A stretch of 64,000 nucleotides of DNA, from IMG/VR virus record IMGVR_UViG_3300020202_000061, positions 186,001-250,000 of that record; one strand, given 5' to 3'. The notes under the pieces were generated by a model that was not told where the DNA came from, searched no databases, and saw only the letters and a program-made list of their open reading frames with translations. Below are positions 43,976-62,232 of the stretch, piece by piece (positions within the stretch are counted from its first letter, which is position 1; every line of letters begins with the position of its first letter). The translations under genes and the position numbers were made by a program.

Positions 43976-44112
43976 ACTTCGGGTCGTTTGGATTGGGTTA
44001 TTGCTCCATAAGCACGAGGGTGTAGGTTCGAATCCTACTCTGCCGACCAATACCGGCAGATAGCATAACGGTAGTGCACGTAAAACATCTGGTCCGCCTT
44101 TTATCCGAAGTT
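43976..44112 (+). ncRNA. YrlA-like Y RNA / circularly permuted tRNA module, copy A
   Basis: CTTCGGGT(C)G/TTATCCGAAG bulged stem; T arm, TCTGCCG-ACCA-ATAC-CGGCAGA, then D arm. Confidence 0.72.
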
Positions 44113-44118
44113 GATTTC

Positions 44119-44200
44119 GCGCCTATGGCGAAACTGGTAGACGCACTGGAATGAGAGTCCAGCGAGTAAAATCATGGAGGTTCGAGTCCTCTTAGGCGCA
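44119..44200 (+). tRNA. tRNA-Leu(GAG), no encoded CCA
   Basis: GCGCCTA/TAGGCGC-A then CTA. Confidence 0.88.
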
Positions 44201-44203
44201 CTA

Positions 44204-44339
44204 AACTCGGGTCGTTAGATTGGGTTATCGTAGCCCGTCCCCATCGTGGGTTCGAATCCCACTACCTGTCGTATGACGGGTATAGCCAAGTGGTTAAGGC
44301 AGGGACTTGTATAAACCAGTCGGCCTTTTTATCCGAGTT
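44204..44339 (+). ncRNA. YrlA-like Y RNA, copy B
   Basis: AACTCGGGT(C)G/TTATCCGAGTT; T arm, acceptor closed by GTAT, D arm, GGGAC/GTCCC stem. Confidence 0.72.
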
Positions 44340-44343
44340 GTTT

Positions 44344-44424
44344 GCCCTGGTGGCGTAATGGTAGCCGCGCTGGATTCAAAACCCAGTGCCGAGAGGCGTG
44401 TCGGTTCGAGTCCGACCTGGGGCA
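44344..44424 (+). tRNA. tRNA-Leu(CAA), no encoded CCA
   Basis: GCCCTGG/CTGGGGC-A then CCC. Confidence 0.88.
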
Positions 44425-44477
44425 CCCAGTTGACAAAATCCTCTGTATCTCTTAGATGAGTGCAGGGGATTATTTTT

Positions 44478-45002
44478 ATGACACGCATTGGCATCTACGC
44501 GGGATCGTTTGATCCACCGACCAATGGTCACCAATGGATGATTCAGGAGGGGGCCAAGCTCTTCGACAATCTGATTGTGGCCATCGGTGTAAACCCGGCG
44601 AAACGCCCCATGTTCAGCGTGGCCGAGCGCAAAGCCATGCTCCAGGACATGTTGGTATGTGATCGATATGGTTTGCAAAACGTCCAGGTAACGACGTTCG
44701 AAAACGAGTTCCTCATCGGCTACGCGCGTGAGATCGGAGCCAACTACATTCTCCGTGGAATCCGTTCGGCCGCCGATTACGAATACGAACACAATATGCG
44801 CAACATCAACGAGGATATTGGCTCGGATTGGCCCGAGCGGAACAGAACCACAGTGTTTTTGATTCCACCGAGGGAGGTCTGTGAGATCAGTTCCAGTACG
44901 GTGAAGGGGTTGATCGGCCCCAATGGTTGGGAGGGCATTGTCGCGAAATATGTGCCGCGCAGTGTTTACGAGATTTTGATCAAAAAATCCAGGGAAGGGT
45001 GA
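44478..45002 (+). CDS. coaD: phosphopantetheine adenylyltransferase
   Basis: GIYAGSFDPPTNGH, LRGIRS..DYEYE, EISSSTVK. Confidence 0.9.
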   Translation: MTRIGIYAGSFDPPTNGHQWMIQEGAKLFDNLIVAIGVNPAKRPMFSVAERKAMLQDMLVCDRYGLQNVQVTTFENEFLIGYAREIGANYILRGIRSAADYEYEHNMRNINEDIGSDWPERNRTTVFLIPPREVCEISSSTVKGLIGPNGWEGIVAKYVPRSVYEILIKKSREG

Positions 45003-45003
45003 A

Positions 45004-45240
45004 ATGGCATTGTTCGTGAGTTACGTCTTGAACACGGCTGGTATCACGCAGCACGAATTTGACTGGCGCGTGATTGATTGTCCGACACCAACTTGCAAGG
45101 AAGAGATCGCAGCGCTCCAATCCAGTCTGAAACAGACCATTTGCGGTGAGCGCGACCGAGCCTGCATCGAACGACGGGGCAATAGTGCTCATGTCTACGG
45201 GCTGACCGTGTTGAATTGGAGAGAGATCGGTGCTGGTTAG
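45004..45240 (+). CDS. hypothetical protein
   Basis: coupled ORF. Confidence 0.5.
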   Translation: MALFVSYVLNTAGITQHEFDWRVIDCPTPTCKEEIAALQSSLKQTICGERDRACIERRGNSAHVYGLTVLNWREIGAG

Positions 45241-45694
45241 TGTTTTCGCGGACGCCTCGTACCATCACGAGTCCCGTGCAGGAGGCTGGGCCGGGTGGGC
45301 GAAGTCCGACCGTGGTTCTCATTATGAGGGGGGTCCGATCCGGACCCCTCTTGCCTCATCAACCGAGGCCGAGTTTCTCGCCGTGGTCAATGCCGTCCAC
45401 ATGTCGATCAAAGCCAAGATCACTGAAAAGCATGATTTCATTCTGATCCAATCTGATTGTCAGTCCGTCGAGCACATCCTGTTCAAACCGAACTATGTGA
45501 TGACCTCCATCATTAAGCGGGCTCGTGCCCATTTGATGGCATTACGATTCGAGCATCAACTCTCCTTCTCATATCGTCATGTCAAGGGTCACTCCTACAA
45601 GAACGAACCCAGATACGCGATAAATCGTCTCTGTGACGGTATAGCCGGTCGAGGTATGGTCCAGGCCCGAACCGCACGGGGATGGCGTAGCTGA
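45230..45694 (+). CDS. RNase HI-like protein
   Basis: FADAS, TEAEFLA, QSDC, HVKGH, NRLCD. Confidence 0.85.
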   Translation: MLVSVFADASYHHESRAGGWAGWAKSDRGSHYEGGPIRTPLASSTEAEFLAVVNAVHMSIKAKITEKHDFILIQSDCQSVEHILFKPNYVMTSIIKRARAHLMALRFEHQLSFSYRHVKGHSYKNEPRYAINRLCDGIAGRGMVQARTARGWRS

Positions 45695-45719
45695 ATAAAT
45701 ATCCCATGGAGGAACCCCC

Positions 45720-46184
45720 ATGGATATCCAACTTAGCCCACACTTTCGTATGTCCGAATTGGTACGTTCGGAGACTGCTGCCCGCCTCGGCCTGGACAAT
45801 TGGCCGCGCGAACCCCGAGTGATTGAAAACCTCCGTAGTACTGCCCTTCACATCCTAGAGCCGATCCGTGTTCAGTTCGGTATTCCCTTCGCACCAAATT
45901 CCGGCTATCGTAGTCCTGAGGTGAACAGGGCTACCGGGGGTTCCAAAACACGGCAACACATGATGGGACAGGCAGTCGATATCGAACTGCCGGGCGTTTC
46001 CAATCACTTATTGGCGGAATGGGTGCGGAAAAATCTACAGTTCGACCAAATCATTCTTGAATGCTATCGTCGCGGAATTCCCAACTCCGGATGGGTTCAT
46101 ATCCGGTACGCAAGCTCTTCGAATCGTCATCAAACTCTGACATTCATTCAGGGTCAGGGATATCTGCCGGGATTTGTTATCTGA
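45720..46184 (+). CDS. peptidase M15A family endolysin-like
   Basis: NSGYRS..VN..GG....QH..GQAVD..WVHI; TAAATA upstream. Confidence 0.88.
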   Translation: MDIQLSPHFRMSELVRSETAARLGLDNWPREPRVIENLRSTALHILEPIRVQFGIPFAPNSGYRSPEVNRATGGSKTRQHMMGQAVDIELPGVSNHLLAEWVRKNLQFDQIILECYRRGIPNSGWVHIRYASSSNRHQTLTFIQGQGYLPGFVI

Positions 46185-46558
46185 TAATTCCGAGATATCA
46201 ATCCTGTGACAAAATATTCTTAACGGCAGAAATTACCTACTGCTCAATTGACAACGTGCTTTTTGTGTGATTTGTAGCACTTCGGGGATGTTGTTCAACC
46301 GGGGGATACAGACGGAGACGGGGTATGACTCCAGCACGTATCGAAACGAGACATACGCGTTATGGGACGCGTCTTGATCGGGTCACCATTGAGGAACCCG
46401 ATGTGATCGTGATCCACACTCAGTCGGAGGTGATCACGGTGGATGCGAGACGTAAATCCGAACTGGTTCGGGTCGAGTTCATCCACACCGGAGAAGTCGA
46501 GATCATTCGTTGACATTCTCGGGGTTTCGTGGTATTTCCGGGGAAACGGAGAAATACC

Positions 46559-46738
46559 ATGTCGTTGTCCAATACTGACGAGATTGACCATCGCTGGGCG
46601 AATGCGCTTGCATCGTTGCAGGGCGCATACCGTCATATGCTGGACACCGTGGTCGATGCCGAGGAGGTCCGGTCCCGCAACCGACTGATCGCACTCTGCA
46701 AGCGTATCGCCGAGGATCATAAGGATTCGCCAACATGA
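46559..46738 (+). CDS. hypothetical protein
   Basis: GGAG RBS. Confidence 0.5.
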   Translation: MSLSNTDEIDHRWANALASLQGAYRHMLDTVVDAEEVRSRNRLIALCKRIAEDHKDSPT

Positions 46739-46959
46739 TCGATGGCACCAAGGAACTCTTCCTGGTCACAGCCACGATCTGGCAGCACGGCTACCAGAAT
46801 GAGGAAGAGGCCGCCATCATCACGGAGGTTCGTCTGGTCGAGGCCGACACAACGAGCGATGCCCGCGCCAAATACGAGAAGTATTGGGAGCGGAAGTCCG
46901 AGCCCTTTGGCACGTGGTATGAGCTTCGCGAAGTCGAAGTGACGGACGTGATCCGATGA
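46735..46959 (+). CDS. hypothetical protein
   Basis: ATGA coupling. Confidence 0.55.
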   Translation: MIDGTKELFLVTATIWQHGYQNEEEAAIITEVRLVEADTTSDARAKYEKYWERKSEPFGTWYELREVEVTDVIR

Positions 46960-47249
46960 GCCGGTTCTGTCCGAACGCGATGCTGGCCTGCTACAACCCG
47001 AAGTGCGACAAGGGGTGTGCTCATCCCATGTTCCAGGCTGTTTACACGCTATCGATGGACCACAAGGACAAGAGCGTCCGCAAGGTTGTTGGAACCCTGA
47101 GTGAATGTCTGTCGGCGGCCAGTGAGATCGTGAAGCGCCCACCGCCGGGCACCCTCGACGTGATTCTGACCGATCCCCAGGGCGAGAAATTGTTCACCTG
47201 GGACCTGATCAAACACGCATCCTATCGGGGAAATACCGAGAATACTTGA
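46956..47249 (+). CDS. hypothetical protein, Cys-containing
   Basis: ATGA coupling. Confidence 0.5.
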   Translation: MSRFCPNAMLACYNPKCDKGCAHPMFQAVYTLSMDHKDKSVRKVVGTLSECLSAASEIVKRPPPGTLDVILTDPQGEKLFTWDLIKHASYRGNTENT

Positions 47250-47297
47250 CAATCCCCAGGGTTTCTGGTAGAATCCTCTTGCAATTCAGGAGGACCC

Positions 47298-47606
47298 ATG
47301 CCCGGCACCCGTGCGACCATCCGTCAGATGCTGAACTTCTTCAACGCGAATGTTCGGCTGGCCTTCGCCAAGCATCAAAATCGTGAGCAGTTCCTGGCCG
47401 GGTTCAAGCCGGACCTCCACGAGAAGCTGGGTACGCTCTACGATGACTATCACAAGCGTGTTCTGAACGCGCAGACCCTCCGAGACAAATGGTTGGCCGA
47501 TGGCAACGAGGCGGCAGAGCGCGGCAATCAGAAGCGTGCCGACTATTGCTACGCGAAGTCGCAGACCTGGACCGACCGCTACAACCGGTTGGTCGGTGAC
47601 GCCTAG
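47298..47606 (+). CDS. hypothetical protein
   Basis: AGGAGG RBS after promoter 47246; ends in TAG. Confidence 0.7.
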   Translation: MPGTRATIRQMLNFFNANVRLAFAKHQNREQFLAGFKPDLHEKLGTLYDDYHKRVLNAQTLRDKWLADGNEAAERGNQKRADYCYAKSQTWTDRYNRLVGDA

Positions 47607-47855
47607 ATGTTCACCCTGATCGTCCTCTCCTGCCTGCTCCCGACCACCTGCATCGAGGATCATTCCCCAGCGGATTACATCACGGAGGAACGGTGTTTCG
47701 CCCAGGGTGCGATCCTGGCCGGGATGAATCGGGTCGAATTCGGTAGGATCGGCTGGGACTTTTCCATCGAACACACTCTGATCTGCACAGATCAATTCGG
47801 GGAGCAAATCGTCCGCAAACATACGGATTTGGTTGACAAATCGCTGGGTTTCTGA
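47607..47855 (+). CDS. small exported protein
   Basis: ATG directly after an in-frame TAG; hydrophobic N-terminus with Cys. Confidence 0.55.
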   Translation: MFTLIVLSCLLPTTCIEDHSPADYITEERCFAQGAILAGMNRVEFGRIGWDFSIEHTLICTDQFGEQIVRKHTDLVDKSLGF

Positions 47856-47890
47856 TAGACTTGGCGAACCAAATCAGGAGAAACCACCGC

Positions 47891-48229
47891 ATGATGTTGC
47901 TGACCAAGGAACTGCGCCGCGAGCTTTTGAAGAACGGCACTCTGTCAGAGTCCGAGAAAGAGAAGCTCAAACCCGTCGTGAAGTTCTTCAACCCAACCGG
48001 CGCGGCCACGTGGTTGATCACGGAAATGGACCCGGACGGGGATCGCCTGTTCGGCCTTTGCGATCTCGGCTTCGGGGAGCCCGAACTCGGCTACGTCAGC
48101 CTGACCGAGCTTCAACTCACTCCAGTGCGTTTCGGTTTGGGGATCGAGCGTGATCGCTGGTTCACCCCGAACAAGACCCTCCAGGAATACGCCGACGAGG
48201 CACGCGAGAAGGGTCGCGTCCAGGCATGA
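47891..48229 (+). CDS. DUF2958 family protein
   Basis: PVVKFFNPTGAATWLITE..LFGLCDLG.G.PELGYVSL.EL. Confidence 0.9.
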   Translation: MMLLTKELRRELLKNGTLSESEKEKLKPVVKFFNPTGAATWLITEMDPDGDRLFGLCDLGFGEPELGYVSLTELQLTPVRFGLGIERDRWFTPNKTLQEYADEAREKGRVQA

Positions 48230-48447
48230 GACGCAAGCCGCGCCCCCTCGGTGACTATACTGACAAGGCATGGCTGACCGGCTGGGATTACTGCATCATG
48301 CTCCGCCGGATCAATGAGAATCCCTATACTCGGCGTCCCCAGCATGACGCGTTCCGACGTGGCTACAAGGCGTGTGAAAACAACGCCGTGAGCAGCTTGC
48401 GCACGGTGATGCGGCGGCGATATCCAGAAAGGTTGTTCGCAACATGA
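48226..48447 (+). CDS. hypothetical protein
   Basis: AW..GW....NPY.....AF.RGY (RMF-like pattern). Confidence 0.5.
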   Translation: MRRKPRPLGDYTDKAWLTGWDYCIMLRRINENPYTRRPQHDAFRRGYKACENNAVSSLRTVMRRRYPERLFAT

Positions 48448-48617
48448 CTGCGATTTTCATCATGTTCGTGTTTGCATTCATTCTGGTCCTGATCCTGTTG
48501 TTCGGAGATTTGACCATCGAGCAAGCAGGGGCAATACAGACCTACGGTGTCTCAGTCATGGGTCTGTTTACGGTCGGCGTCCTGATCTACGAAGGCTTGA
48601 AGCTCTAGGAGGCATCC

Positions 48618-49064
48618 TTGTTGAAAGGTCCCTACGAACTCGAACTCTGCCGGTTTCGCATCGGTGAGCGCGTGCGGGTGAAAGAGTCCAGCAAGGCCCG
48701 CTGGTGTCGTGACAAGCCTTTGGTCGTGTTGAACCTGAGCTACGCTGATGGCCAATCAGCAATACCCGGCAAGCTCGTGGTGGGTTGTGCGGTCGAACGA
48801 CCGTTTGAAGCCTACGGGCCGATCATACACGAGTTCGCCCAGGATGATCTGGAACCGAATCCGTTCCCGGCTCTGACCGAGGAACATCTTCCAGATGGTT
48901 GGTTCCCGGCCAGTGGTGGAGCGGAGAAGCCCTTCAAGTCGCGTTCCGGCCGCACCCTGCTCTACTGCTACAATCCGGCCAAGCACGCCCACGCCTACCT
49001 GGATCAGGACAACGACATTATCCTGACCGACAAGGAAGCGGCTGATCTCATGCAGATGACGTAA
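48618..49064 (+). CDS. hypothetical protein
   Basis: AGGAGG RBS before TTG. Confidence 0.6.
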   Translation: MLKGPYELELCRFRIGERVRVKESSKARWCRDKPLVVLNLSYADGQSAIPGKLVVGCAVERPFEAYGPIIHEFAQDDLEPNPFPALTEEHLPDGWFPASGGAEKPFKSRSGRTLLYCYNPAKHAHAYLDQDNDIILTDKEAADLMQMT

Positions 49065-49072
49065 ATATTCGC

Positions 49073-49327
49073 ATGCCAAGATACGTCCTTGAAGTCCCCA
49101 CATTGGCCACGAACGGGAGCATCAATTCCCCGGCTCTGAAATCGTTTGAAGTTCCGAACGATAAGGAAGCGCGTGACTATTGTGTTCTTCACGCCAGAAG
49201 CCTGTATACGCTGTTCCACAGCAGCCAAAACAATCCGTTCAGTTCGGGCGGCACCAACTGGACCAAAATCGCTCAATGCCGCCGTACAGACAACGATAAG
49301 ATCGTCTGGAGATACGGTCAGTATTGA
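49073..49327 (+). CDS. hypothetical late-type protein
   Basis: TAAATA 5 nt before ATG. Confidence 0.55.
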   Translation: MPRYVLEVPTLATNGSINSPALKSFEVPNDKEARDYCVLHARSLYTLFHSSQNNPFSSGGTNWTKIAQCRRTDNDKIVWRYGQY

Positions 49328-49358
49328 CAAATTGCTGATCATCCAACAGATTATTAAT

Positions 49359-49558
49359 CGAGCGATGGCGTAACACACGTCGAACCCGGCCTTAAAGGAT
49401 GCCCCTCGGGGTGGTCGCAACAAGACGTGTGCCAGCCGGGTGGAAGTTCGAATCGTAGGTCGTAGGACCGCTCTTAGCGTCCGCATAGAGGCTTGGTAAT
49501 GCGCAAGCCGGTGGGTAGATTCGAACTCGTGGGACCGGGAACTAAACCGGATCGCTCG
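49359..49558 (+). ncRNA. unassigned ~200-nt structured RNA
   Basis: CGAGCGAT/ATCGCTCG closing stem; ACACGTC/GACGTGT; AGTTCGAATC/GATTCGAACT; promoter at 49324. Confidence 0.6.
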
Positions 49559-49572
49559 CCTTGGGGAGAGCT

Positions 49573-51751: not shown

Positions 51752-51942
51752 GCATGGACGCAACCCCTACCGGCCGTTGGGAAATCACCCCGTGGTGGCT
51801 CCGCCTGATCGGGAAGCCCAGCTTTCGTATGTTCTATGAGGGTTGGGGCAGTGATTTCATGGGTAGTGTGCCGGACTATTGGGAATACTCTTGGGAGCCT
51901 TGGAAGGAAGAGTTTCTTCACGACAACACAAAAACCCCTTGA
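51748..51942 (+). CDS. Trp-rich hypothetical protein
   Basis: ATGA coupling. Confidence 0.5.
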   Translation: MSMDATPTGRWEITPWWLRLIGKPSFRMFYEGWGSDFMGSVPDYWEYSWEPWKEEFLHDNTKTP

Positions 51943-51977
51943 CATCCCCATGGGGTTCCCCTAAATAGGTCTTGGAT

Positions 51978-52056
51978 AGGACGAGCCGCTTGGTTCGGGT
52001 TATTGCTTGGTGCAACGGGCGTAAGCCCATATCCCGGTCCGCTTTTTGTTCGTCCT
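51978..52056 (+). ncRNA. minimal Y-RNA-like element D
   Basis: GGACGAGC(C)G/TTGTTCGTCC bulged stem; GGGTTATTG; promoter at 51939. Confidence 0.55.
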
Positions 52057-52077: not shown

Positions 52078-52155
52078 ATGAAGTTTGGCGTTAACACTCA
52101 CATCACTCAGATCGCCCGCGATGCTCAGCAACGCGGCGAGGAGAAGTCTGTGTAA
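52078..52155 (+). CDS. 25-aa small ORF
   Basis: GAGGTG RBS; followed by terminator 52185-52208. Confidence 0.4.
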   Translation: MKFGVNTHITQIARDAQQRGEEKSV

Positions 52156-52220
52156 GGCCCCGGATGTACGGGTCATGCACAGGCGCTCCGTTTTGAGCGC
52201 CTTTTTTATTGCTTGAATGA

Positions 52221-52296
52221 TGCCCCTTGGCGCAATTGGTAGCGCAGCGGACTCTGAATCCGAAGGTTCCAGGTTCGACCCCTGGAGGGGCAACCA
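52221..52296 (+). tRNA. tRNA-Gln(CTG)
   Basis: TGCCCCT/AGGGGCA-A-CCA; CT-CTG-AA. Confidence 0.92.
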
Positions 52297-52401
52297 AACA
52301 CGGGCCGACTGGCTTGGATTATTGGATGAAGGCTGAGGACGATGACTCCTCTTGCCGCAGGGCTTCGAAACCCTGGTCCAGGTCTCTAACTTGTCCGTGT
52401 T
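52297..52401 (+). ncRNA. Y-RNA-like element E
   Basis: AACACGGGC(C)GA/TTGTCCGTGTT; GGATTATTG; internal TTCGA hairpin. Confidence 0.6.
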
Positions 52402-52406: not shown

Positions 52407-52485
52407 TCCAGTGTTGCTCTGTCGGTATGGGCGACCTGCCTCTGAAGCAGGGAATTCGTAGGTTCGACTCCTACCGCTGGAACCA
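52407..52485 (+). tRNA. tRNA-Gln(CTG), second copy
   Basis: TCCAGTG/CGCTGGA-A-CCA. Confidence 0.82.
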
Positions 52486-56148: not shown

Positions 56149-56373
56149 GTGAGCTACGATATCGAGCGCAAGCTGATCTACACGAAGGAAGAATCCGGCC
56201 TCATTGATGATGGGGTCGAATTCTTTCCGGCCGAAACCATCACGATCTACCTGAATGATCTGGACGAGATCGAAATCACCAAGGTTCTCTATACCAAACC
56301 CGTCCGGATTCAGCATTTCAAGCTGGATCGAGTTCTCCGTGATCTCATCGCCAATGCCAAGTGGGAATCGTGA
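56149..56373 (+). CDS. hypothetical protein
   Basis: coupled ORF. Confidence 0.5.
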   Translation: MSYDIERKLIYTKEESGLIDDGVEFFPAETITIYLNDLDEIEITKVLYTKPVRIQHFKLDRVLRDLIANAKWES

Positions 56374-57005: not shown

Positions 57006-57208
57006 TCATGAATTTGCGAAAAACCCTGAGCAATATCGGTTTTACTCTGACCATGGGTGGGTTGGCCTATGGAATGGTATTCTTGATCGGGGCCATCGCA
57101 CATCAAATGAGTCTCTACGAAAATATCGCCTTTTCCGGAGTTTGTGCCCTGATCTCGACGGGCATGACGATGATGGCGATGATCAAGAATCCAAAACTTC
57201 GAGCTTAA
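57005..57208 (+). CDS. two-TM membrane protein
   Basis: hydrophobic helices. Confidence 0.55.
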   Translation: MMNLRKTLSNIGFTLTMGGLAYGMVFLIGAIAHQMSLYENIAFSGVCALISTGMTMMAMIKNPKLRA

Positions 57209-57224
57209 CGCGTAGGGGGAACGA

Positions 57225-57677
57225 ATGCGTACATCACTGCTTGGACTGATGCTGATCGTGTCCGCCTCGACCCCGGTCCTGGCCGACGAATACGATCACG
57301 AGAAGGCGTTGGTCGCGGTGGGCTTCTCGACGTTGGTCGGGAACGACTCAGTCACCTGGGACACCCAGGATGGATTTGGCCGCTCGATTACCGAGGTCAC
57401 AATCACGGAGCCGAACGGACGTGAGTGCACCTATGTGAGTGTTGATCTCTACCCGAGCAATCCCGGCTACATGAACGCAGCTTGCCGCCGGGACAACACC
57501 CAGGATTGGATCGTCAACGAAGCCTACAAGATGGACGTGCAGGAATTACCTGCACCACAGCCGTTGTGCCGTCAAGTCAGGGTCAGCATGATCGGCGTGG
57601 CCACAGGCCTTCTGACCCGCATTGGCACGTTTTGCCAAAACAGTCAGGGTGTGTGGAATCTCCAGGAAATCCGATAA
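57225..57677 (+). CDS. exported protein with 17-kDa-antigen-like C-terminal repeats
   Basis: signal peptide; C......AC....W twice. Confidence 0.65.
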   Translation: MRTSLLGLMLIVSASTPVLADEYDHEKALVAVGFSTLVGNDSVTWDTQDGFGRSITEVTITEPNGRECTYVSVDLYPSNPGYMNAACRRDNTQDWIVNEAYKMDVQELPAPQPLCRQVRVSMIGVATGLLTRIGTFCQNSQGVWNLQEIR

Positions 57678-57719
57678 TTTCCCTTGACAAACCCCGGAGT
57701 TTCCTGTAGACTCCGAGGT

Positions 57720-58394
57720 ATGGAAAATAGCCGCTTCGCCTCCGTCGATCAGTATCTCGCCGCCCTCATCCGGGCTTGGCCCACCCTGTTCGCGAGCCGC
57801 GAGGATGCGCTCCTGCGGGTGGCCACTCAGTCCTGGAACGACAAGACGGGTTGTCCCTATCGGGAGGATGATGACTCCGAGAAGGACCTGAGCCAGACTT
57901 TTGAAGAGATTCTGGCCGAAAAGCGCGGCAAGCTCGGCGGCCGTGATCGCTCGACGCTGATGGATAGCTTCGATCATCGCATGGCCCTGGAACGGATGCG
58001 CGAGAACCACGACGCGCTGTTCACCCGCAACAACGCCGATCTGATCGCCACGCTGGAGGGCGAGTTCACGTCTCCGCCCAATCTGTCCATCTACAATGTC
58101 AATCGTTGGCCTGCTACCATGACTCCGGCCTGGAAGGCTGCGATGGTCGAACTGGCCGACCGCATCCTGGAATACCGGGATGTTCAGGTGGACAAGCACA
58201 CGGAGAGTCCGATCAGTCGTGATCAGTATCGTGCCGGTCTGAAAGAGGCTCAGGCGGCGGCTCGTGAAATCCTCGCCCGGTTCGCGCCGGAGCGCTTCAC
58301 CCAGGCACAGAAGCAGGAGCGCGATCAGGAAGTCCAGAAGCTGCGCTATGCGGCCGAGGCGCTCGGCTACAAGCTGACCCCGGTACAGCAGTAA
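57720..58394 (+). CDS. hypothetical protein
   Basis: promoter at 57684 and GAGG RBS. Confidence 0.65.
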   Translation: MENSRFASVDQYLAALIRAWPTLFASREDALLRVATQSWNDKTGCPYREDDDSEKDLSQTFEEILAEKRGKLGGRDRSTLMDSFDHRMALERMRENHDALFTRNNADLIATLEGEFTSPPNLSIYNVNRWPATMTPAWKAAMVELADRILEYRDVQVDKHTESPISRDQYRAGLKEAQAAAREILARFAPERFTQAQKQERDQEVQKLRYAAEALGYKLTPVQQ

Positions 58395-58711
58395 TGCACA
58401 AGACAGCCGAACAACTCCGTGACAGCCACCCCGCGACCTTTCGACGATTGCTGGAGGCGAGCACCCACACCACACGGATAATTCGAGCGGCTTTGGATAA
58501 GGGAATGTCTGGTCCTTCTTTGATGGACCCCGAATACGCGAAATGGTCAACCATCGAGAACCGCATGGGTGATCGGCTCTACGTCAAGGCGATCAAGCTG
58601 CCGTTGGCCGAAGCCAAGCGGTTCATCGCGTTCTTCCCACCCTGCGTGGAGCGGGCCTTCCTTGCGGATTGGGTCCGGCAACAGGAGAAGGCGAATGAAA
58701 ACCGCCAGTGA
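58394..58711 (+). CDS. hypothetical protein
   Basis: TAATG coupling; paralog-like to 58695..59000. Confidence 0.55.
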   Translation: MHKTAEQLRDSHPATFRRLLEASTHTTRIIRAALDKGMSGPSLMDPEYAKWSTIENRMGDRLYVKAIKLPLAEAKRFIAFFPPCVERAFLADWVRQQEKANENRQ

Positions 58712-59000
58712 ATTTCTTTCGGTGTATCAGACCGATCTGGACACAATGCGTCGTCAGACGAATGTGATGAACCAGATCATCGCCGACTACGAGGCGCTGG
58801 GTCAGGTTGAGCTTCCGGCAGACGATCCCCGATATCGAGCCGCATTCAAGACAAAGCTCCGTCTCGGAAAGGAACTCTTGGCCGAGATCAAGCGACTCCC
58901 GCTGGATGAGGCGATCATCGTCTACAACCATTTCCCTCATGGCGCACACCGGTCGTTTCTGCGGACGTGGATCGCCGATCAGGGAGTTCTGGTCCAATGA
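58695..59000 (+). CDS. hypothetical protein
   Basis: shares IKxLPL.EA...FP....R.FL..WI with the upstream gene. Confidence 0.55.
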   Translation: MKTASEFLSVYQTDLDTMRRQTNVMNQIIADYEALGQVELPADDPRYRAAFKTKLRLGKELLAEIKRLPLDEAIIVYNHFPHGAHRSFLRTWIADQGVLVQ

Positions 59001-59305
59001 AGCAGATCGAGATCATTCCCATTCAACATGGGATTCCGTGCCAACCAGGGAACGCCACAGCATTTCGCTTGGACGTGTTCGGGATGTACGTCGGGAATTT
59101 TTCGACCGAGTCAGAAGCACAGGAAACGGCTGACAATCTGGTCGCCGGAGTGTTTCCGTCGAATTTCTCACGGGAGTTTATCGACCTGTTTCTGAACAAC
59201 AAGAAGGTCTGGCAGGACCAGGAAACAGAACGACTCGCCGATATCCGTTCCGACGCGGATTGGGAGGAATTATTGTGGAATTCCTCAACGGGAGCCCCGG
59301 AATGA
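58997..59305 (+). CDS. hypothetical protein
   Basis: ATGA coupling. Confidence 0.5.
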   Translation: MKQIEIIPIQHGIPCQPGNATAFRLDVFGMYVGNFSTESEAQETADNLVAGVFPSNFSREFIDLFLNNKKVWQDQETERLADIRSDADWEELLWNSSTGAPE

Positions 59306-59568
59306 CCCGCGATTTCCAAAAGTTTCACAACAGCCTCCGCATCATGTACAGCCTCGATTTGGCTGATCTGGTCGAGGCTGACGTGCTCCCGAAGCATGAG
59401 GATGGCAGTTTCAACACGCTCGGCGTGATCCTCTCCTACGAGCAGTTCCACCAGAACCCGATGGGTTGGCTGGTTCAGACCGCCTCCGATGAACAGGTCG
59501 AACGTCTCTGGAACTTGATTGAGTCCCGTCAACCTAACAATCTCAAGGGGGAAGCCAATGTCTCATAA
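59302..59568 (+). CDS. hypothetical protein
   Basis: ATGA coupling. Confidence 0.5.
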   Translation: MTRDFQKFHNSLRIMYSLDLADLVEADVLPKHEDGSFNTLGVILSYEQFHQNPMGWLVQTASDEQVERLWNLIESRQPNNLKGEANVS

Positions 59569-59770
59569 CGGCCATCTGACCGTGCTGTGCGAGGTCGAGC
59601 GCTACTTTCAGCGCACTCGCTGTGTCTCGATCATGCCGGTCCCGCACCCGACTCGTGTTGGCGCGAAGGTGATCCAGGACGAGATCGAGTGGATCGTTAC
59701 TCGCATCATCAATCCGACGCCGATGACGCCGTTCGAGGCAGCGGCGGCCGACGCCCATGCCCACTCTTGA
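59558..59770 (+). CDS. hypothetical protein
   Basis: GGGGGA RBS. Confidence 0.45.
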   Translation: MSHNGHLTVLCEVERYFQRTRCVSIMPVPHPTRVGAKVIQDEIEWIVTRIINPTPMTPFEAAAADAHAHS

Positions 59771-59957
59771 TCAGACCTACCTCCTGTGTGACGTGGCCTG
59801 GAACCACTTGAAGGCTCGCACCTACATCCGCCAGCGTGAGGCGGTGCCGGGAGAAAAAGGGATCAACTTCTTCGGCACCATGTGGGATGTGGTTGCGGTG
59901 GTCGATCCAAATCCGATCACTGAGGAACAACTGAGGCACCAATACTATGGATACTGA
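59757..59957 (+). CDS. hypothetical protein
   Basis: overlapping series. Confidence 0.45.
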   Translation: MPTLDQTYLLCDVAWNHLKARTYIRQREAVPGEKGINFFGTMWDVVAVVDPNPITEEQLRHQYYGY

Positions 59958-60171
59958 GCCACAACGGATCATCCGCCGTGTCATTGCTGGTTTCTTGTTC
60001 GGGAAACCACAGATGGAGATCGCCTGTTCTGATCCCTGCTGCGAGTACCAGCTTGGTGCATATGACCAGGACGAGGAACGGCATCGTGAGGGCAACCCCC
60101 ACTACCAGGGACTCTGTCTGAATCATATCGACGATCAGCGCCGGGCCGACGAGGAAGTCTATTGGCTATGA
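59947..60171 (+). CDS. hypothetical Cys-containing protein
   Basis: GAGG RBS. Confidence 0.5.
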   Translation: MDTEPQRIIRRVIAGFLFGKPQMEIACSDPCCEYQLGAYDQDEERHREGNPHYQGLCLNHIDDQRRADEEVYWL

Positions 60172-60458
60172 GCAAGACCTCCTACGTGATCCACGTGAAC
60201 CGGCAGGTCATCGCGTTCAACGCGAAGCACGGGAAGCCTCTCCTGCCTCCGTATATCGTCCGCAGGGGCTCGAAGCCCTCGGTCTACGGGTTCGGTGTGG
60301 AGATCACCGGCAAGACCATCCTGGTCGATCCTAGGCGGCACAAGCCTCTGAAATGTGGTGCTCGCGCCTGGATCGCATGTGATGGACCCGTAAAGATCAC
60401 CGATCCGATGAGTTTCCGGGAGGTTGAAGCCCTTCGGAAGAAGCACGAGTCCGCGTAA
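60168..60458 (+). CDS. hypothetical protein
   Basis: IHVNRQVI..N...KPLKCGARAWI pattern. Confidence 0.65.
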   Translation: MSKTSYVIHVNRQVIAFNAKHGKPLLPPYIVRRGSKPSVYGFGVEITGKTILVDPRRHKPLKCGARAWIACDGPVKITDPMSFREVEALRKKHESA

Positions 60459-60512
60459 ATACCGTGGTATTTTTTCCTGGATCGGCCAGGAAAACCATGG
60501 TATAATACGCGC

Positions 60513-61028
60513 ATGAGGCGATCTCTAACCACTGCCATAGCACTGGTTCTTGGCTTCCAGGCAATCACCGCCGATCTGGCGAGCGCCGCTGCCAATACAC
60601 CTATCCAGGTCAATTGGGGTGCCGTCGAGTTCTATGGTCAGAATCACGACCAGATGTCTCAGGGAGAGATCAAACCAGCCCAAATTGAACCCCAATTGAT
60701 TGCTGCCGCCCAGGACGTGTTGAATCGGAGGGGCATCTACATTCCCGAACCGAATGGTCGGGACAAATGGAAGATTTCCTGGATCGGTGACTGTGAGGAT
60801 CAGGCTCTGGCAGTGATGAAGTGGCTGAACCAGAAGGGTGTACCGTTGGAGGCGATGAGGATCGTCTATACCCCGCCCACGAAGAAGCGCTTGGGCCACG
60901 CCATGCTATGCATCTGGGACGCCGAACGCGGTCCGATCTGCATCGACAGCCTGAGCAAAACTCCGACCTTTCTCAAGGATAAGCCCGGCAAGTGGTTTGA
61001 GGCTCTCTCGAACAAACGCGTGAAATAA
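60513..61028 (+). CDS. transglutaminase-like cysteine protease (BTLCP-like), exported
   Basis: signal peptide; GDCEDQA...GHAML...ID. Confidence 0.8.
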   Translation: MRRSLTTAIALVLGFQAITADLASAAANTPIQVNWGAVEFYGQNHDQMSQGEIKPAQIEPQLIAAAQDVLNRRGIYIPEPNGRDKWKISWIGDCEDQALAVMKWLNQKGVPLEAMRIVYTPPTKKRLGHAMLCIWDAERGPICIDSLSKTPTFLKDKPGKWFEALSNKRVK

Positions 61029-61097
61029 TTCACTACCTCGTAAAAACCTCTTGACTTCCCTAGGATGCCCCGCTAAATACCCGTTACCAACTTCGTT

Positions 61098-61174
61098 GGG
61101 CGCGTAGAGGAGAGGCCGTCCTCGGCACCCTGTCACGGTGCATATCGCGGGTTCGAATCCCGTCGCGCTCGCCA
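61098..61174 (+). tRNA. tRNA-Asp(GTC)
   Basis: cloverleaf, G73, CCA. Confidence 0.92.
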
Positions 61175-61255
61175 ACGAGGGCCGAACTGAATCGGATTAT
61201 TGTTCTTCCAAAACAAGAGGGATAGCATCCCACCGGTTCTCAAATTTGCCCTCGT
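61175..61255 (+). ncRNA. minimal Y-RNA-like element F
   Basis: ACGAGGGC(C)GAA/TTTGCCCTCGT; GGATTATTG. Confidence 0.62.
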
Positions 61256-61261
61256 GATTTT

Positions 61262-61339
61262 CTGGGTGTAGCTCAGCTTGGTTAGAGTGTCGTGTTCGGA
61301 ACGCGAAGGTCGGAGGTTCAAATCCTCTCACCCAGACCA
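61262..61339 (+). tRNA. tRNA-Pro(CGG)
   Basis: CTGGGTG/CACCCAG-A-CCA; TT-CGG-AA. Confidence 0.92.
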
Positions 61340-61344
61340 GTTTT

Positions 61345-61572
61345 AGTAGGAATCTGCGGGTTCATGTCCCCGAGTGTTGACATGATGGCGGCTGGTAGCC
61401 GAGGCAATGAGATTCATGCAACCACCCTTCGGGGTGTATCTCAGGCCGGTTCTCGGACCTAAACCGAGTGGTGGAAGGAGCGCGAGGACGTGCGAATCTC
61501 GCCCCCGGTTCCCGGACCTAAACCGGGTGGAGACGGTGATCCGTTGGGCGTGCCGGTGCCCTAGTACCGGCG
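61345..61572 (+). ncRNA. unassigned structured RNA with twin ACCUAAA hairpins
   Basis: CTCGG-ACCTAAA-CCGAG and CCCGG-ACCTAAA-CCGGG. Confidence 0.5.
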
Positions 61573-61576
61573 ATTT

Positions 61577-61653
61577 CAGGGTGTAGCTCAGCTTGGTTAG
61601 AGTGCCGTGTCGGGAACGCGGAGGCCGGTGGTTCAAATCCACTCATCCTGACC
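61577..61653 (+). tRNA. tRNA-Pro(GGG)
   Basis: CAGGGTG/CATCCTG-A-CCA; TC-GGG-AA. Confidence 0.88.
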
Positions 61654-61829
61654 AATTAGATCACCTGGATAGGTGGCCCATGAGGGACCGATTCCAGATG
61701 ATATCCACGCCTGCGGTTTACCGTAGGCCCCGGCGGGCAGAGGAAACTCTGGCCCGCCGTTTTCATTAGGGCTTTCTTCACGACCGGTGGCTTACCATCT
61801 ATCCAGTAAATATTCTGGGGGAAACCACC

Positions 61830-62075
61830 ATGAATGAGATCGTCGATCTAAAGCGTCGTGCCGGAATCCACAAAATATCTCGGTTGGATAATCCCGAGGG
61901 GTATCTCCAGGCGGTGCTCGATGCGAAATTGGAACTGGACGACTTCAAGAAGTCTATCCAGCATCTGACCTGGACGCCCGAGTTGGAAGCGAAATTCACC
62001 GAGGTATTCGCGTTCATGGATCAGGCCCTAAAATCGGGGATTGAACAAGCCACGAATCGTCGTCGTAACTCTTGA
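61830..62075 (+). CDS. late protein with KRRAGI motif
   Basis: TAAATA upstream; MNEIVDLKRRAGI. Confidence 0.65.
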   Translation: MNEIVDLKRRAGIHKISRLDNPEGYLQAVLDAKLELDDFKKSIQHLTWTPELEAKFTEVFAFMDQALKSGIEQATNRRRNS

Positions 62076-62110
62076 CATTCCCTCTGATCTGTCCTAAGTA
62101 GGATGTTGAT

Positions 62111-62232
62111 GACGGGTCGTTAGAATTGGGTTATTGTTGCCTTGATAGCAAACGAGTGGGTTCGATTCCCACGCATCCTCGGAAGAGGGTGTCCTTGGCG
62201 GTAGTTCTAGTCCGGTTCGCCTCTTATCCGTC
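62111..62232 (+). ncRNA. YrlA-like Y RNA, copy C
   Basis: GACGGGT(C)G/TTATCCGTC; TGGGTTATTG; T arm then looped acceptor-like stem; promoter at 62072. Confidence 0.68.

What the first reader, a model, noticed from the sequence alone, without database searches (positions are those of the whole stretch)
43976..62232. Family of at least six Y-RNA-like ncRNAs embedded in the tRNA arrays
Seen: six elements (43976-44112, 44204-44339, 51978-52056, 52297-52401, 61175-61255, 62111-62232) whose 5' and 3' ends pair into a helix with one unpaired C before a G (GGGU(C)G/UUAUCC, GGGC(C)GA/UUG(U/C)CC, GAGC(C)G/UUGUUC). Each is followed by GG(G/A)UUAU(U/C)G. The outer stems differ between copies yet stay complementary. 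Three copies enclose a tRNA module in permuted order (T arm, looped acceptor stem, D arm) and three do not. Knowledge: a bulged-C terminal helix is the Ro60/Rsr binding site of Y RNAs, and bacterial YrlA RNAs carry this kind of permuted tRNA-like module. Inference: an expanded, diversified Y RNA repertoire co-transcribed with tRNAs. No TROVE/Rsr gene is visible in the window, so the RNAs could serve a distant phage Rsr or decoy host Rsr, tRNA-binding proteins or anticodon nucleases.
Basis: partly seen in the sequence, partly recalled or inferred. Interest (0 to 1): 0.9.

Follow-up and report, generated by a model that had tools for sequence, protein, structure and literature searches.

The report
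Phage Y RNAs inside tRNA arrays
Six small RNA genes scattered among the tRNA genes of a giant phage are real Y RNAs, the partner RNAs of the Ro60/Rsr protein, and the same phage does encode that protein about 100 kb away with a seventh Y RNA beside it; this is an unusually large and dispersed example of a known system.

Summary
A composite 5' motif, G(A/G)G(C/U)CG, 5-12 nt, GG(A/G)UUAU, occurs exactly six times in the 64 kb window. Each closes into a terminal helix with one bulged C, followed by a second co-varying helix.

Two covariance models were built only from RNAs lying next to Rsr genes in other phages. Between them they recover all six:
- El1: 83 bits
- El2: 74 bits
- El6: 47 bits
- El3: 33 bits
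- El4: 29 bits
- El5: 25 bits

The only other significant hit (E below 0.01) is a tandem-tRNA artefact. Rfam YrlA matches only El1, at 36.8 bits, below its threshold of 69.

A close relative keeps five of the six, with compensatory changes.

The window has no Rsr gene. Walking the contig showed that the IMG/VR contig stops 247 bp short of one. A 401 kb assembly that is 100% identical over the 10.8 kb compared carries a 649-aa TROVE + vWA_Ro60 protein. A seventh Y RNA and the phage's tRNA-type promoter lie directly upstream of it, about 100-118 kb from the six.

Verdict: these are new members of the known Rsr/Y RNA system. The unusual points are the copy number, the separation from rsr and the placement inside tRNA operons. 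Binding, processing and function are inferred, not shown.

The parts
43976..44111 (+). El1, a YrlA-type Y RNA. Stem 1 is 43976-43984 with 44103-44111; bulged C at 43985; stem 2 is 43989-43997 with 44088-44096. Inside lie a T arm, a 7-bp acceptor-like hairpin with ACCA in its loop, and a D arm. It sits between two tRNA-Leu genes (43892-43975 and 44119-44201).
   Evidence: R2 83.3 bits, E 1e-16, full length. Rfam YrlA 36.8 bits, full model, below the gathering score of 69. Anatomy. An orthologue in L168 shows compensatory changes.
44204..44339 (+). El2, a YrlA-type Y RNA. Stem 1 is 44204-44212 with 44331-44339; bulged C at 44213; stem 2 is 44218-44223 with 44316-44321. Inside lie a T arm, an 8-bp acceptor-like hairpin and a D arm. 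It sits between tRNA-Leu 44119-44201 and tRNA-Leu 44343-44428.
   Evidence: R2 74.2 bits, E 1e-14. Rfam YrlA partial match, 19.1 bits. Anatomy. An orthologue in L168 shows A-U to G-C and C-G to U-A swaps in stem 1.
51979..52055 (+). El3, a short (YrlB-type) Y RNA. Stem 1 is 51979-51986 with 52048-52055; bulged C at 51987. Two small hairpins replace the tRNA-like module. It begins 11 nt after its own promoter's -10 element and has no flanking tRNA.
   Evidence: R1 33.4 bits, E 3e-6, full length. R2 31.9 bits. 89% identical orthologue in L168.
52297..52401 (+). El4, a short Y RNA with two internal hairpins, the second resembling a T arm. Stem 1 is 52297-52305 with 52393-52401; bulged C at 52306; stem 2 is 52311-52318 with 52377-52384. 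It sits between tRNA-Gln 52221-52296 and tRNA-Gln 52407-52485.
   Evidence: R1 29.2 bits, E 3e-5. R2 25.5 bits. The orthologue in L168 has a G-C to A-U swap in stem 1 and an A-U to G-C swap in the internal hairpin.
61175..61255 (+). El5, a short Y RNA. Stem 1 is 61175-61182 with 61248-61255; bulged C at 61183; it carries GCCGAA, an exact GNCGAA motif. It sits between tRNA-Asp 61098-61174 and tRNA-Pro 61262-61339.
   Evidence: R1 25.2 bits, E 4e-4. R2 17.5 bits. It is absent from relative L168, where tRNA-Asp is followed directly by tRNA-Pro.
62111..62232 (+). El6, a YrlA-like Y RNA with a T arm and an 8-bp acceptor-like hairpin but no clear D arm. Stem 1 is 62111-62117 with 62226-62232; bulged C at 62118. 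It begins 11 nt after its promoter's -10 element, and tRNA-Pro 62239-62316 follows 6 nt downstream.
   Evidence: R2 47.0 bits, E 1e-8; the D-arm region is skipped by a local end. R1 19.1 bits with filters off. Orthologue in L168.
51938..51967 (+). Phage tRNA-type promoter (CTTGAC, 18 nt, TAAATA) driving El3.
   Evidence: One of 13 matches in the window, all on +, against 0.01 expected by chance. This is a consensus match only; transcription has not been shown.
61050..61079 (+). The same promoter type, ahead of the tRNA-Asp / El5 / tRNA-Pro unit.
62071..62100 (+). The same promoter type, ahead of the El6 / tRNA-Pro unit.
   Evidence: The same promoter type also precedes the seventh Y RNA next to rsr at L252:45-75.
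43060..43088 (+). The same promoter type, about 310 nt upstream of the array Phe-His-Tyr-(Tyr-like)-Leu-El1-Leu-El2-Leu.
   Evidence: That it serves this array is inferred from position only.

Best explanation
The six elements are genes for Y RNAs, the non-coding partners of the ring-shaped RNA-binding protein Ro60/Rsr. El1, El2 and El6 are YrlA-type: the Rsr-binding stem encloses a tRNA-like module in the order T arm, closed acceptor stem, D arm. El3, El4 and El5 are short YrlB-type RNAs.

Proposed working. They are transcribed from the phage's own tRNA-type promoters, mostly as parts of tRNA precursors. RNase P cuts at the 5' end of the downstream tRNA and 3' tRNA trimming acts on the upstream one, releasing discrete RNAs whose 5' and 3' ends pair. 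That terminal helix, with its invariant bulged C followed by G and the adjacent stem 2 ending in GGRUUAUYG, is the docking site for the phage-encoded Rsr, whose gene lies about 100-118 kb away. The variable inner modules then either tether Rsr to other proteins (PNPase in the known bacterial RNP, or tRNA-recognising enzymes for the tRNA-like ones) or gate access to its cavity. This would support turnover or repair of structured RNA and tRNA during infection.

Shown here: the sequence and structure anatomy; family membership by independent models; covariation; an Rsr gene with a cognate Y RNA on an assembly identical to the source contig over the 10.8 kb compared; and the promoter consensus with flanking tRNAs.

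Inferred: transcription, processing, Rsr binding and biological role.
For: - Motif. Exactly six composite 5' motifs occur in the window, each with a terminal bulged-C helix and a stem 2.
- Short model. R1 was built from 34 short RNAs in Rsr loci of other phages. It gives full-length hits to El3, El4 and El5 (33.4, 29.2 and 25.2 bits), with no other window hit under default filters. With filters off it also gives El6 19.1 bits.
- Long model. R2 was built from 10 long Rsr-linked RNAs. It gives El1 83.3, El2 74.2 and El6 47.0 bits and also detects El3-El5. The only other significant hit (E below 0.01) is a tandem tRNA-Ala artefact.
- Family covariation. 87.6% of cells are paired against 69.3% in shuffles, with 123 double-change cells against 45. 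The bulged C and the following G are invariant in 34 of 34 sequences.
- Association with Rsr. Four of four independent IMG/VR relatives found with the window motif lie within about 2 kb of a TROVE + vWA_Ro60 gene. In 120 phage Rsr loci a strict regex finds 70 such elements. Of these, 69 are on the Rsr strand, at a median 571 nt from the Rsr N-terminal motif.
- Close relative. L168 keeps orthologues of El1, El2, El3, El4 and El6 with compensatory substitutions. In the ten-sequence alignment 97.1% of cells are paired against 74.6% shuffled and 37-46% when slid, and 15 of 24 pairs show double changes.
- The phage's own Rsr. L252:286-2235 matches TROVE at 4.7e-33 and vWA_Ro60 at 9.6e-34. Its closest solved structures are D. 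radiodurans Rsr 2NVO at 4e-81 and Ro60 1YVP at 1.6e-71. L252 is 100% identical to the source contig over 10,770 bp.
- The seventh Y RNA. L252:85-149 scores 40.8 bits with R1. It shares GGGUCG, GGGUUAUCG and UUUAUCCG with the six.
- Processing context. The window holds an RNase P RNA and a CCA-adding enzyme, and five of the six elements abut tRNAs.
- Literature. PMC4201824 reports the GNCGAAN0-1G motif, the tRNA-like module and YrlA in 22 phages, and shows that M. smegmatis YrlA is cleaved by RNase P and receives CCA.
Against: - Rfam YrlA stays below its gathering score for El1 and finds four elements not at all.
- The Rfam Y_RNA family gave no hit either.
- The six lie about 100 kb from rsr, whereas the criterion used in the literature is within 4 kb.
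- My training sets were selected with a regex that required the 5' motif and a stem 1 of at least 6 bp. Stem 1 pairing in A4 is therefore partly by construction, and A7 is fitted to the model.
- Folding energies are only modestly better than shuffles.
- There are no expression or binding data.
- That the 401 kb ENA assembly carries the six elements is inferred, not read directly. It rests on the identical 10.8 kb overlap and on every queried protein of the source contig (two of them from the window) being found on two contigs of 0.2-1 Mb.
Confidence: 0.8

Rival explanations
1. The RNAs act mainly as decoys, independently of the phage Rsr. The tRNA-like ones would soak up host tRNA-targeting nucleases or tRNA-binding defence proteins, or all of them would titrate a host Rsr.
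For: - They sit inside tRNA arrays rather than beside rsr.
- Three carry tRNA-like T and acceptor modules.
- The phage carries many RNA-repair and counter-defence genes: RNA ligase, HAD_SAK_2, an Acb1-like protein and PTH2.
- A phage Ro60-like protein was reported to counter a defence system in Bas63 (PMC11482910).
Against: - The part most conserved among the seven copies and across the family is the Rsr-binding module, not the tRNA-like module; three copies lack the latter.
- None has an anticodon arm, the usual target of anticodon nucleases.
- The phage has its own Rsr, whose adjacent Y RNA shares the same module.
- The host is unknown, so a host Rsr cannot be assessed.
Confidence: 0.1
2. 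They are structured spacers or processing signals of the tRNA operons, or decaying copies of the rsr-linked Y RNA, with no function of their own in trans.
For: - Five of the six abut tRNAs.
- El5 is absent from the close relative, and the more distant relative has the tRNA-Gln array without any Y RNA. They are therefore dispensable over evolutionary time.
Against: - Compensatory substitutions maintain stem 1, the T arm, the acceptor hairpin and the D arm between orthologues that are only 64-71% identical.
- The bulged C, the following G and GGRUUAUYG are kept in all copies.
- El3 and El6 have their own promoters placed to start at the RNA's first paired bases.
- Ordinary spacers in the same arrays are 3-15 nt long.
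Confidence: 0.06
3. El1, El2 and El6 are circularly permuted or split tRNA genes that yield functional tRNAs after processing.
For: - The order is T arm, acceptor 3' strand, a loop (ACCA in El1), acceptor 5' strand, then the D arm (sequence).
- The window encodes RNase P RNA and a CCA-adding enzyme.
Against: - There is no anticodon stem-loop. Where it would be, the Y-RNA stems 1 and 2 carry the Rsr motif.
- ARAGORN and the Rfam tRNA model do not call them.
- El3-El5 share the outer module but have no tRNA parts.
- The homologues next to Rsr genes have the same layout.
Confidence: 0.03

Closest known systems
Bacterial YrlA and YrlB (S. Typhimurium, M. smegmatis; Rfam RF02553; Chen et al. 2014, PMC4201824)
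   Same: - A GNCG(AA) motif lies near the 5' end, and the 5' and 3' ends pair.
- YrlA-type copies enclose a T arm, a closed acceptor stem and a D arm in that order.
- Shorter YrlB-type partners exist in the same genome.
- An Rsr gene is present in the genome.
- El1's 7-bp acceptor hairpin with ACCA in its loop parallels M. smegmatis YrlA, which is cut by RNase P and receives CCA.
   Different: - The scores fall below Rfam's gathering threshold.
- Both strands of the bulged-C helix are recognisable, as in Deinococcus and animal Y RNAs; the paper says only the 5' strand is recognisable in Salmonella and Mycobacterium.
- There are seven copies rather than one to three.
- Six of them lie about 100 kb from rsr, inside tRNA arrays.
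Phage Y RNAs next to phage Rsr (22 phages in Chen et al. 2014; at least 384 Rsr-encoding IMG/VR contigs)
   Same: Same family by covariance models R1 and R2. The phage's seventh copy (L252:85-149) has the canonical position, about 140 nt upstream of rsr on the same strand.
   Different: In 120 phage Rsr loci the elements lie a median 571 nt from the Rsr N-terminal motif, and only 4 of 70 are within 30 nt of a tRNA. Here five of six abut tRNAs, and none of the six is near rsr.
Metazoan Y RNAs (hY1-hY5, Xenopus Y3) bound by Ro60
   Same: A terminal helix formed by the two ends, with a single bulged C before G: GGGC(C)GA / UUGUCC in El4 against GGUC(C)GA / UUGACC in vertebrates (the vertebrate sequence is from my own knowledge). 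A second helix and then a GUUAUC-like sequence follow.
   Different: The Rfam Y_RNA model gives no hit. The window elements are driven by sigma-70-like promoters, where vertebrate Y RNA genes use RNA polymerase III (my own knowledge). Three copies carry a tRNA-like module.
Deinococcus radiodurans Yrn1 and the RYPER complex (Rsr / Y RNA / PNPase)
   Same: This is the best-studied mechanism: the Y RNA tethers Rsr to an exoribonuclease and gates its cavity (summarised in PMC4201824). The phage Rsr's closest solved structure is D. radiodurans Rsr.
   Different: No PNPase link has been tested here, and Yrn1's tRNA-like parts are arranged differently.
Phage Bas63 gp130, a Ro60-like protein directly upstream of tRNA genes (PhageMaP preprint, PMC11482910)
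   Same: A phage Ro60-like protein together with a tRNA gene cluster. The authors speculate that some annotated tRNAs are Y RNAs. The protein is reported to counter a defence system (ppl).
   Different: In Bas63 the protein abuts the tRNA genes and no Y RNAs were defined. Here the Y RNAs are defined and lie far from rsr.

Membership tests
Y RNA (Ro60/Rsr-binding ncRNA; bacterial and phage YrlA/YrlB) | The 5' and 3' ends pair into a helix that carries the Ro60 site: a GNCG(AA) motif with a bulged C before G. | tested here: met
   All six have a 7-9 bp stem 1, a single bulged C, then G.U. The same C and G are invariant in 34 of 34 Rsr-linked family members.
Y RNA (Ro60/Rsr-binding ncRNA; bacterial and phage YrlA/YrlB) | Significant match to models of RNAs known or inferred to partner Rsr. 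| tested here: met
   The models were built without window sequences. R1 gives El3 33.4, El4 29.2, El5 25.2 and El6 19.1 bits. R2 gives El1 83.3, El2 74.2 and El6 47.0 bits.
Rfam YrlA (RF02553) | Score at or above the curated gathering threshold of 69 bits. | tested here: not met
   El1 scores 36.8 bits (E 6e-5, full model). El2 scores 19.1 bits (partial). El3-El6 give no YrlA hit at E up to 10.
YrlA type | A tRNA-like module in the order T arm, closed acceptor stem, D arm. | tested here: met
   Met for El1 and El2. El6 has the T arm and acceptor hairpin but no D arm by the model. El3-El5 lack the module, so they fit the YrlB type instead.
Y RNA (Ro60/Rsr-binding ncRNA; bacterial and phage YrlA/YrlB) | A Ro60/Rsr (TROVE + vWA) gene in the same genome. 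| tested here: met
   L252:286-2235 matches TROVE at 4.7e-33 and vWA_Ro60 at 9.6e-34 and PDB 2NVO at 4e-81. L252 is 100% identical to the source contig over 10,770 bp. There is none in the window itself.
Y RNA as catalogued by Chen et al. 2014 | Encoded within 4 kb of rsr. | tested here: not met
   The six lie about 99.5-118 kb from rsr, by coordinates. Only the seventh copy, L252:85-149, meets this.
Y RNA (Ro60/Rsr-binding ncRNA; bacterial and phage YrlA/YrlB) | Structure maintained by compensatory change. | tested here: met
   Family alignment A4: 87.6% of cells paired against 69.3% shuffled. The six plus orthologues, A7: 97.1% against 74.6%, with 15 of 24 pairs showing double changes. Pairwise orthologue comparisons agree. 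Caveat: selection and model fitting bias these counts.
Y RNA (Ro60/Rsr-binding ncRNA; bacterial and phage YrlA/YrlB) | Physical binding to Ro60/Rsr that depends on the conserved helix. | not testable with these tools
   Needs co-immunoprecipitation or a gel-shift assay with the phage Rsr and bulged-C mutants.
Y RNA (Ro60/Rsr-binding ncRNA; bacterial and phage YrlA/YrlB) | A discrete, stable small transcript. | not testable with these tools
   Only promoter consensus and flanking tRNA processing sites are available.
tRNA | A cloverleaf with an anticodon arm, recognised by tRNA finders. | tested here: not met
   ARAGORN and the Rfam tRNA model call the neighbouring tRNAs but none of the six.

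The most novel reading that the evidence does not exclude
A giant phage runs a self-contained Y RNA system. One Rsr is served by at least seven Y RNA adaptors whose different inner modules send it to different partners or substrates. The tRNA-like ones would recruit tRNA-handling enzymes or act as bait for host tRNA-directed defences. Their placement in tRNA operons, together with the phage's own RNase P RNA and CCA-adding enzyme, would couple Y RNA maturation and dosage to the phage's tRNA supply. El1 would be split by RNase P and end in its encoded CCA.
Probability: 0.25. Interest if true: 0.75.

Novelty: new member of a known kind. Interest (0 to 1): 0.55.

Why it matters
Y RNAs are usually searched for only within a few kb of rsr. 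This phage shows that most of a genome's Y RNAs can lie far from rsr, hidden in tRNA arrays where annotation sees only gaps. Surveys restricted to rsr neighbourhoods may therefore undercount them.

The locus also brings several things together in one genome:
- seven paralogous Y RNAs with different inner modules;
- one Rsr;
- a phage RNase P RNA and a CCA-adding enzyme;
- about 50 tRNAs.

That makes it a compact system for asking what the tRNA-like domain of bacterial Y RNAs is for, and whether different Y RNAs programme one Ro60 ring for different jobs.

There is a practical lesson too. The apparent absence of Rsr came from a contig that stops 247 bp short of the gene.

Tried and rejected
- Rfam at gathering stringency gave only tRNAs and RNase P RNA. 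At E up to 10 only El1 and part of El2 match YrlA, and that alignment is out of register: it aligns GGGUUAUUGC to the model's GNCGAAUGC.
- MAFFT on window copies mixed with relatives misaligned the 3' halves (A3). I therefore built the models from larger, length-matched sets.
- The search for related loci with two Rsr proteins returned only the queries.
It would also have missed this phage's Rsr, which reads RFVILG..AR.MY.
- A four-protein Rsr alignment returned 80 of at least 384 loci, without the source contig.
- No relatives were found in GenBank phages by megablast. The VWA protein has only 36-37% identical phage homologues, and IMG/VR holds no relative of it other than the source contig itself.
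- I considered the 765-aa VWA protein just downstream of El4 as a rearranged Ro60. I rejected this: only generic vWA similarity (hhalign probability 34% over 65 columns), PHROG of unknown function, no PDB relative.
- I considered the 533-aa ORF L153:401-2002. It is not TROVE.
- A local HMM of 97 phage Rsr proteins found nothing in six-frame translations of the source-contig DNA fetched by then, about 154 kb. The stretches fetched afterwards were checked only through the precomputed Pfam annotation of their gene calls.
- The generic promoter scan does not list the phage promoters, because their -10 element ends in A. I tested the motif directly instead.
- R2 hits at 25154-25313 and at L161, L163 and L152 are tandem-tRNA artefacts of the kind Chen et al. 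warn about.
- I did not run structure prediction, because the real Rsr was found.

Full report
WHAT IS THERE

The window carries 30 tRNA genes and a class A RNase P RNA, all on the + strand. A regular expression for the composite 5' motif G[AG]G[CT]CG, 5-12 nt, GG[AG]TTAT finds exactly six sites on both strands.

Reading the sequence, every element has the same outer architecture:
- a 7-9 bp terminal helix made by its two ends;
- a single unpaired C;
- a G.U pair, extended by one or two A-U pairs in El4 and El5;
- a small asymmetric internal loop;
- a second helix of 5-9 bp ending in GGR;
- then UUAUYG.

The outer-stem sequences differ between copies but stay complementary. The pair next to the bulge is U-A in El1, El2 and El6 and C-G in El3, El4 and El5. 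Stem 2 shows U-A, C-G and U.G alternatives at the same position.

Inside, El1 and El2 hold a T arm, a closed acceptor-like hairpin and a D arm. El6 holds the first two only. El3-El5 hold small hairpins.

Minimum free energies are only modestly better than shuffles (z from -1.4 to -4.1). I do not rest the case on energy.

IS IT A Y RNA?

Rfam gives limited support. YrlA (RF02553) matches El1 over the full model at 36.8 bits (E 6e-5 in 19 kb). That is well below the gathering score of 69. It matches part of El2 at 19.1 bits and nothing else, and the Y_RNA family gives no hit.

I therefore asked whether the motif is linked to Rsr elsewhere. A scan of IMG/VR with a pattern derived from the window, with no reference to Rsr, gave 30 stretches. 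Four of them are the window's own contig, most of the rest look like chance matches inside ORFs, and five stretches (four distinct phages) are convincing relatives with a closing helix. All of these lie within about 2 kb of a gene with TROVE and vWA_Ro60 domains:
- L013 and L014;
- L001;
- L005 and L008.

A DNA pattern for a conserved Rsr peptide then fetched 116 further phage Rsr loci. A strict regex-plus-stem scan of the 120 loci found 70 elements in 43 of them. Of these, 69 are on the Rsr strand, at a median 571 nt from the Rsr N-terminal motif.

From these Rsr-linked RNAs alone I built two covariance models.

R1 comes from 34 short elements (alignment A4). Its structure is paired in 87.6% of cells against 69.3% in shuffles and 38-50% when slid, with 123 double-change cells against 45. 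Under default filters it finds exactly El3, El4 and El5 in the window, at 33.4, 29.2 and 25.2 bits, full length. With filters off it adds El6 at 19.1 bits.

R2 comes from 10 long elements (alignment A5). It finds El1 at 83.3 bits (E 1e-16), El2 at 74.2 and El6 at 47.0. It also finds El3 (31.9), El4 (25.5) and El5 (17.5). The only other significant hit (E below 0.01) is the tandem tRNA-Ala junction at 25154-25313. Chen et al. warned about exactly this kind of false positive (PMC4201824).

So all six are recognised by models that never saw them.

One caveat applies. My training elements were chosen by a regex that demands the 5' motif and a stem 1 of at least 6 bp. Stem 1 pairing in A4 is therefore partly built in. 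Stem 2 and the tRNA-like arms were not selected for.

RELATIVES OF THIS PHAGE

The window is positions 186,001-250,000 of Ga0196964_10000008, which is IMGVR_UViG_3300020202_000061 (347,504 bp). GenBank phages hold nothing close.

A protein search with the VWA gene downstream of El4 found an 89% identical protein. Its contig, L168, is syntenic with the window. L168 has orthologues of El1, El2, El3, El4 and El6 in the same tRNA contexts. It lacks El5: there tRNA-Asp is followed directly by tRNA-Pro.

Pairwise alignments are 64-92% identical and show compensatory changes:
- G-C to A-U in El4 stem 1;
- A-U to G-C and C-G to U-A in El2 stem 1;
- A-U to G-C in the T arm of El1 and in the T-arm-like hairpin of El4;
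- an entirely different but fully paired acceptor hairpin in El1 and El2;
- C-G to U-A in the El2 D arm.

On the ten-sequence model alignment A7, 97.1% of cells pair against 74.6% in shuffles and 37-46% when slid. Fifteen of 24 pairs show a change on both sides. This alignment is fitted to the model, which favours the structure.

A more distant relative, L169 (VWA 56% identical), has three tRNA-Gln genes and no Y RNA. The insertions are therefore lineage-specific and can be lost.

WHERE IS RSR?

The window has none. Pfam on every long ORF and on 78 further ORFs found no TROVE domain.

I walked the contig through exact-protein look-ups and one promoter-pattern scan. This covered 167,320-340,410. 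A profile of 97 phage Rsr proteins found nothing in any frame of the roughly 154 kb fetched by then. The stretches fetched afterwards showed no TROVE in the precomputed Pfam annotation of their gene calls.

The last look-up returned locus L252 from a longer assembly, ENA ERZ27257313 k141_1739793 (401,308 bp). Over 10,770 bp it is 100% identical to the end of the walked region.

L252:286-2235 encodes a 649-aa protein. It matches TROVE at 4.7e-33 and vWA_Ro60 at 9.6e-34. Its closest solved structures are D. radiodurans Rsr 2NVO (4e-81) and Ro60 1YVP (1.6e-71).

By coordinates, the JGI/IMG-VR contig ends 247 bp before this gene's stop codon. The gene is on the opposite strand to the six elements, about 99.5 kb from El6 and about 118 kb from El1.

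About 140 nt upstream of its start codon, on its strand, lies a seventh Y RNA at L252:85-149. It follows the same CTTGAC-N17-CTAAGTA promoter and scores 40.8 bits with R1 (E 1e-8). It shares GGGUCG, GGGUUAUCG and UUUAUCCG with the six.

No further Y RNAs were found in the roughly 183 kb examined. The rest of the genome, which is at least 401 kb, was not seen.

That the ENA assembly holds the six elements is an inference. It rests on the identical overlap and on every queried protein of the source contig (two of them from the window) residing on two contigs of 0.2-1 Mb.

HOW IT LIKELY WORKS

A phage-specific promoter, CTTGAC, 17-18 nt, TAWRTA, occurs 13 times in the window against 0.01 expected, always on the + strand. 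Its -10 element ends 10-45 nt before the first tRNA of an array. For El3 and El6 it ends 11 nt before the first paired base.

El1, El2, El4 and El5 lie between tRNAs with 0-7 nt to spare, and El6 is 6 nt from tRNA-Pro. RNase P cutting at the downstream tRNA, together with 3' trimming of the upstream tRNA, would release RNAs whose ends form stem 1. This is an inference.

The window itself encodes an RNase P RNA (146.6 bits) and a CCA-adding enzyme.

El1's acceptor-like hairpin has 7 bp and reads, after the 3'-strand equivalent, A-CCA. M. smegmatis YrlA, which also has a 7-bp stem, is cleaved there by RNase P and carries CCA in vivo (PMC4201824). I therefore predict the same for El1.

Binding to the phage Rsr is inferred from three things: the invariant C-G of the GNCG motif, the shared module with the rsr-adjacent copy, and the family association.

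For function I follow the established model. A Y RNA tethers Rsr to PNPase and gates its cavity, and rsr-yrlBA-rtcBA is an RNA-repair operon induced by damaged tRNA (PMC4201824, PMC7790460). A counter-defence role, as reported for a phage Ro60-like protein, is possible (PMC11482910).

COMPARISON AND NOVELTY

Y RNAs next to Rsr in bacteria and in 22 phages are published. TROVE proteins in jumbo phages have been noted (PMC7824862). IMG/VR holds at least 384 Rsr-encoding contigs.

These six are therefore new members of a known family. The unusual points are:
- seven paralogues;
- six of them about 100 kb from rsr;
- five of them abutting tRNAs, against 4 of 70 in other phage Rsr loci;
- both strands of the bulged-C helix recognisable, as in animals and Deinococcus.

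I rate the interest as moderate.

Noticed in passing
window 10428-10778 (+): A full-length bacterial class A RNase P RNA (146.6 bits against a gathering score of 100) is encoded by the phage. It sits directly after a 666-aa ORF of unknown function (8397-10397).
   Followed up: partly
window 7543-62100, 13 sites (for example 15437-15465, 40508-40537, 51938-51967): A conserved phage promoter, (AAcCT)CTTGAC, 17-18 nt, TAWRTA. There are 13 matches, all on +, against 0.01 expected. Almost all lie just upstream of tRNA arrays or Y RNAs. The same type precedes the Y RNA next to rsr (L252:45-75).
   Followed up: yes
window 43727-43815 (+): A tRNA-Tyr-like gene: GUA anticodon loop, T arm, 8-bp acceptor stem and ACCA, but no normal D arm and extra hairpins. 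ARAGORN misses it, and the tRNA-Sec model gives a weak 30.3 bits. The close relative L168 has a normal second tRNA-Tyr at this place.
   Followed up: partly
window 61340-61576 (+); L168:17114-17312: A 237-nt structured spacer between two tRNA-Pro genes, with two copies of a CYCGG-ACCUAAA-CCGRG hairpin. The hairpin blocks are nearly identical in the relative while the flanks differ. There is no Rfam hit. Possibly another ncRNA.
   Followed up: partly
window 32699-32776 (+): A tRNA with a CUA anticodon (ARAGORN labels it 'Pyl'), that is, a candidate amber suppressor tRNA.
   Followed up: no
window 52079-52156 and 52181-52202 (+): A 25-codon ORF with a ribosome-binding site directly after El3. 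It is followed by the strongest intrinsic-terminator match of the region, just before the tRNA-Gln / El4 array, for which no promoter was found.
   Followed up: no
L001:1312-1430 (-), IMGVR_UViG_3300028920_000001 (427 kb phage): A Y RNA in normal tRNA order: acceptor 5' strand, D arm, then the Y stem as a closed hairpin in place of the anticodon arm, T arm, acceptor 3' strand. This is the circular permutation of the YrlA layout. It scores 46.3 bits with R2 and lies beside a short Y RNA, 1.7 kb downstream of Rsr.
   Followed up: partly
window 39252-40499, 28554-29657, 30919-31956 (-); other window ORFs whose coordinates were not resolved (batch scan): The region is rich in RNA and translation genes. 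The three listed ORFs are a CCA-adding enzyme, SAM synthetase and a SAM-lyase-like protein. A batch Pfam scan of 78 further window ORFs also reported PTH2 (twice), the HAD_SAK_2 RNA-repair domain, a Macro domain, a class II aminoacyl-tRNA-synthetase-like core, RNase H and an Rv2179c-like exoribonuclease; that scan does not say which ORF carries which domain.
   Followed up: partly
source contig outside the window: L152:4244-5455, L153:2055-3641, L251:15469-20236, L166:7965-12473, L164:7204-7635: Other cargo on the source contig: an RNA ligase, an Acb1-like anti-CBASS protein, a PrkA / DUF444 / SpoVR triad, an NAD salvage set (NMNAT-NUDIX, NMN transporter, NAMPT), an RF-1-like protein and an IF3_N protein. 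tRNA genes extend from about 178 kb to 293 kb, about 55 in all.
   Followed up: no
L252:2235-2482; JGI contig end at 347,504: The IMG/VR and JGI contig stops 247 bp before the stop codon of rsr. The phage's Rsr reads RFVILG..AR.MY where most phage Rsr proteins read RFLILG..GG.YY, so motif-based DNA scans miss it.
   Followed up: yes
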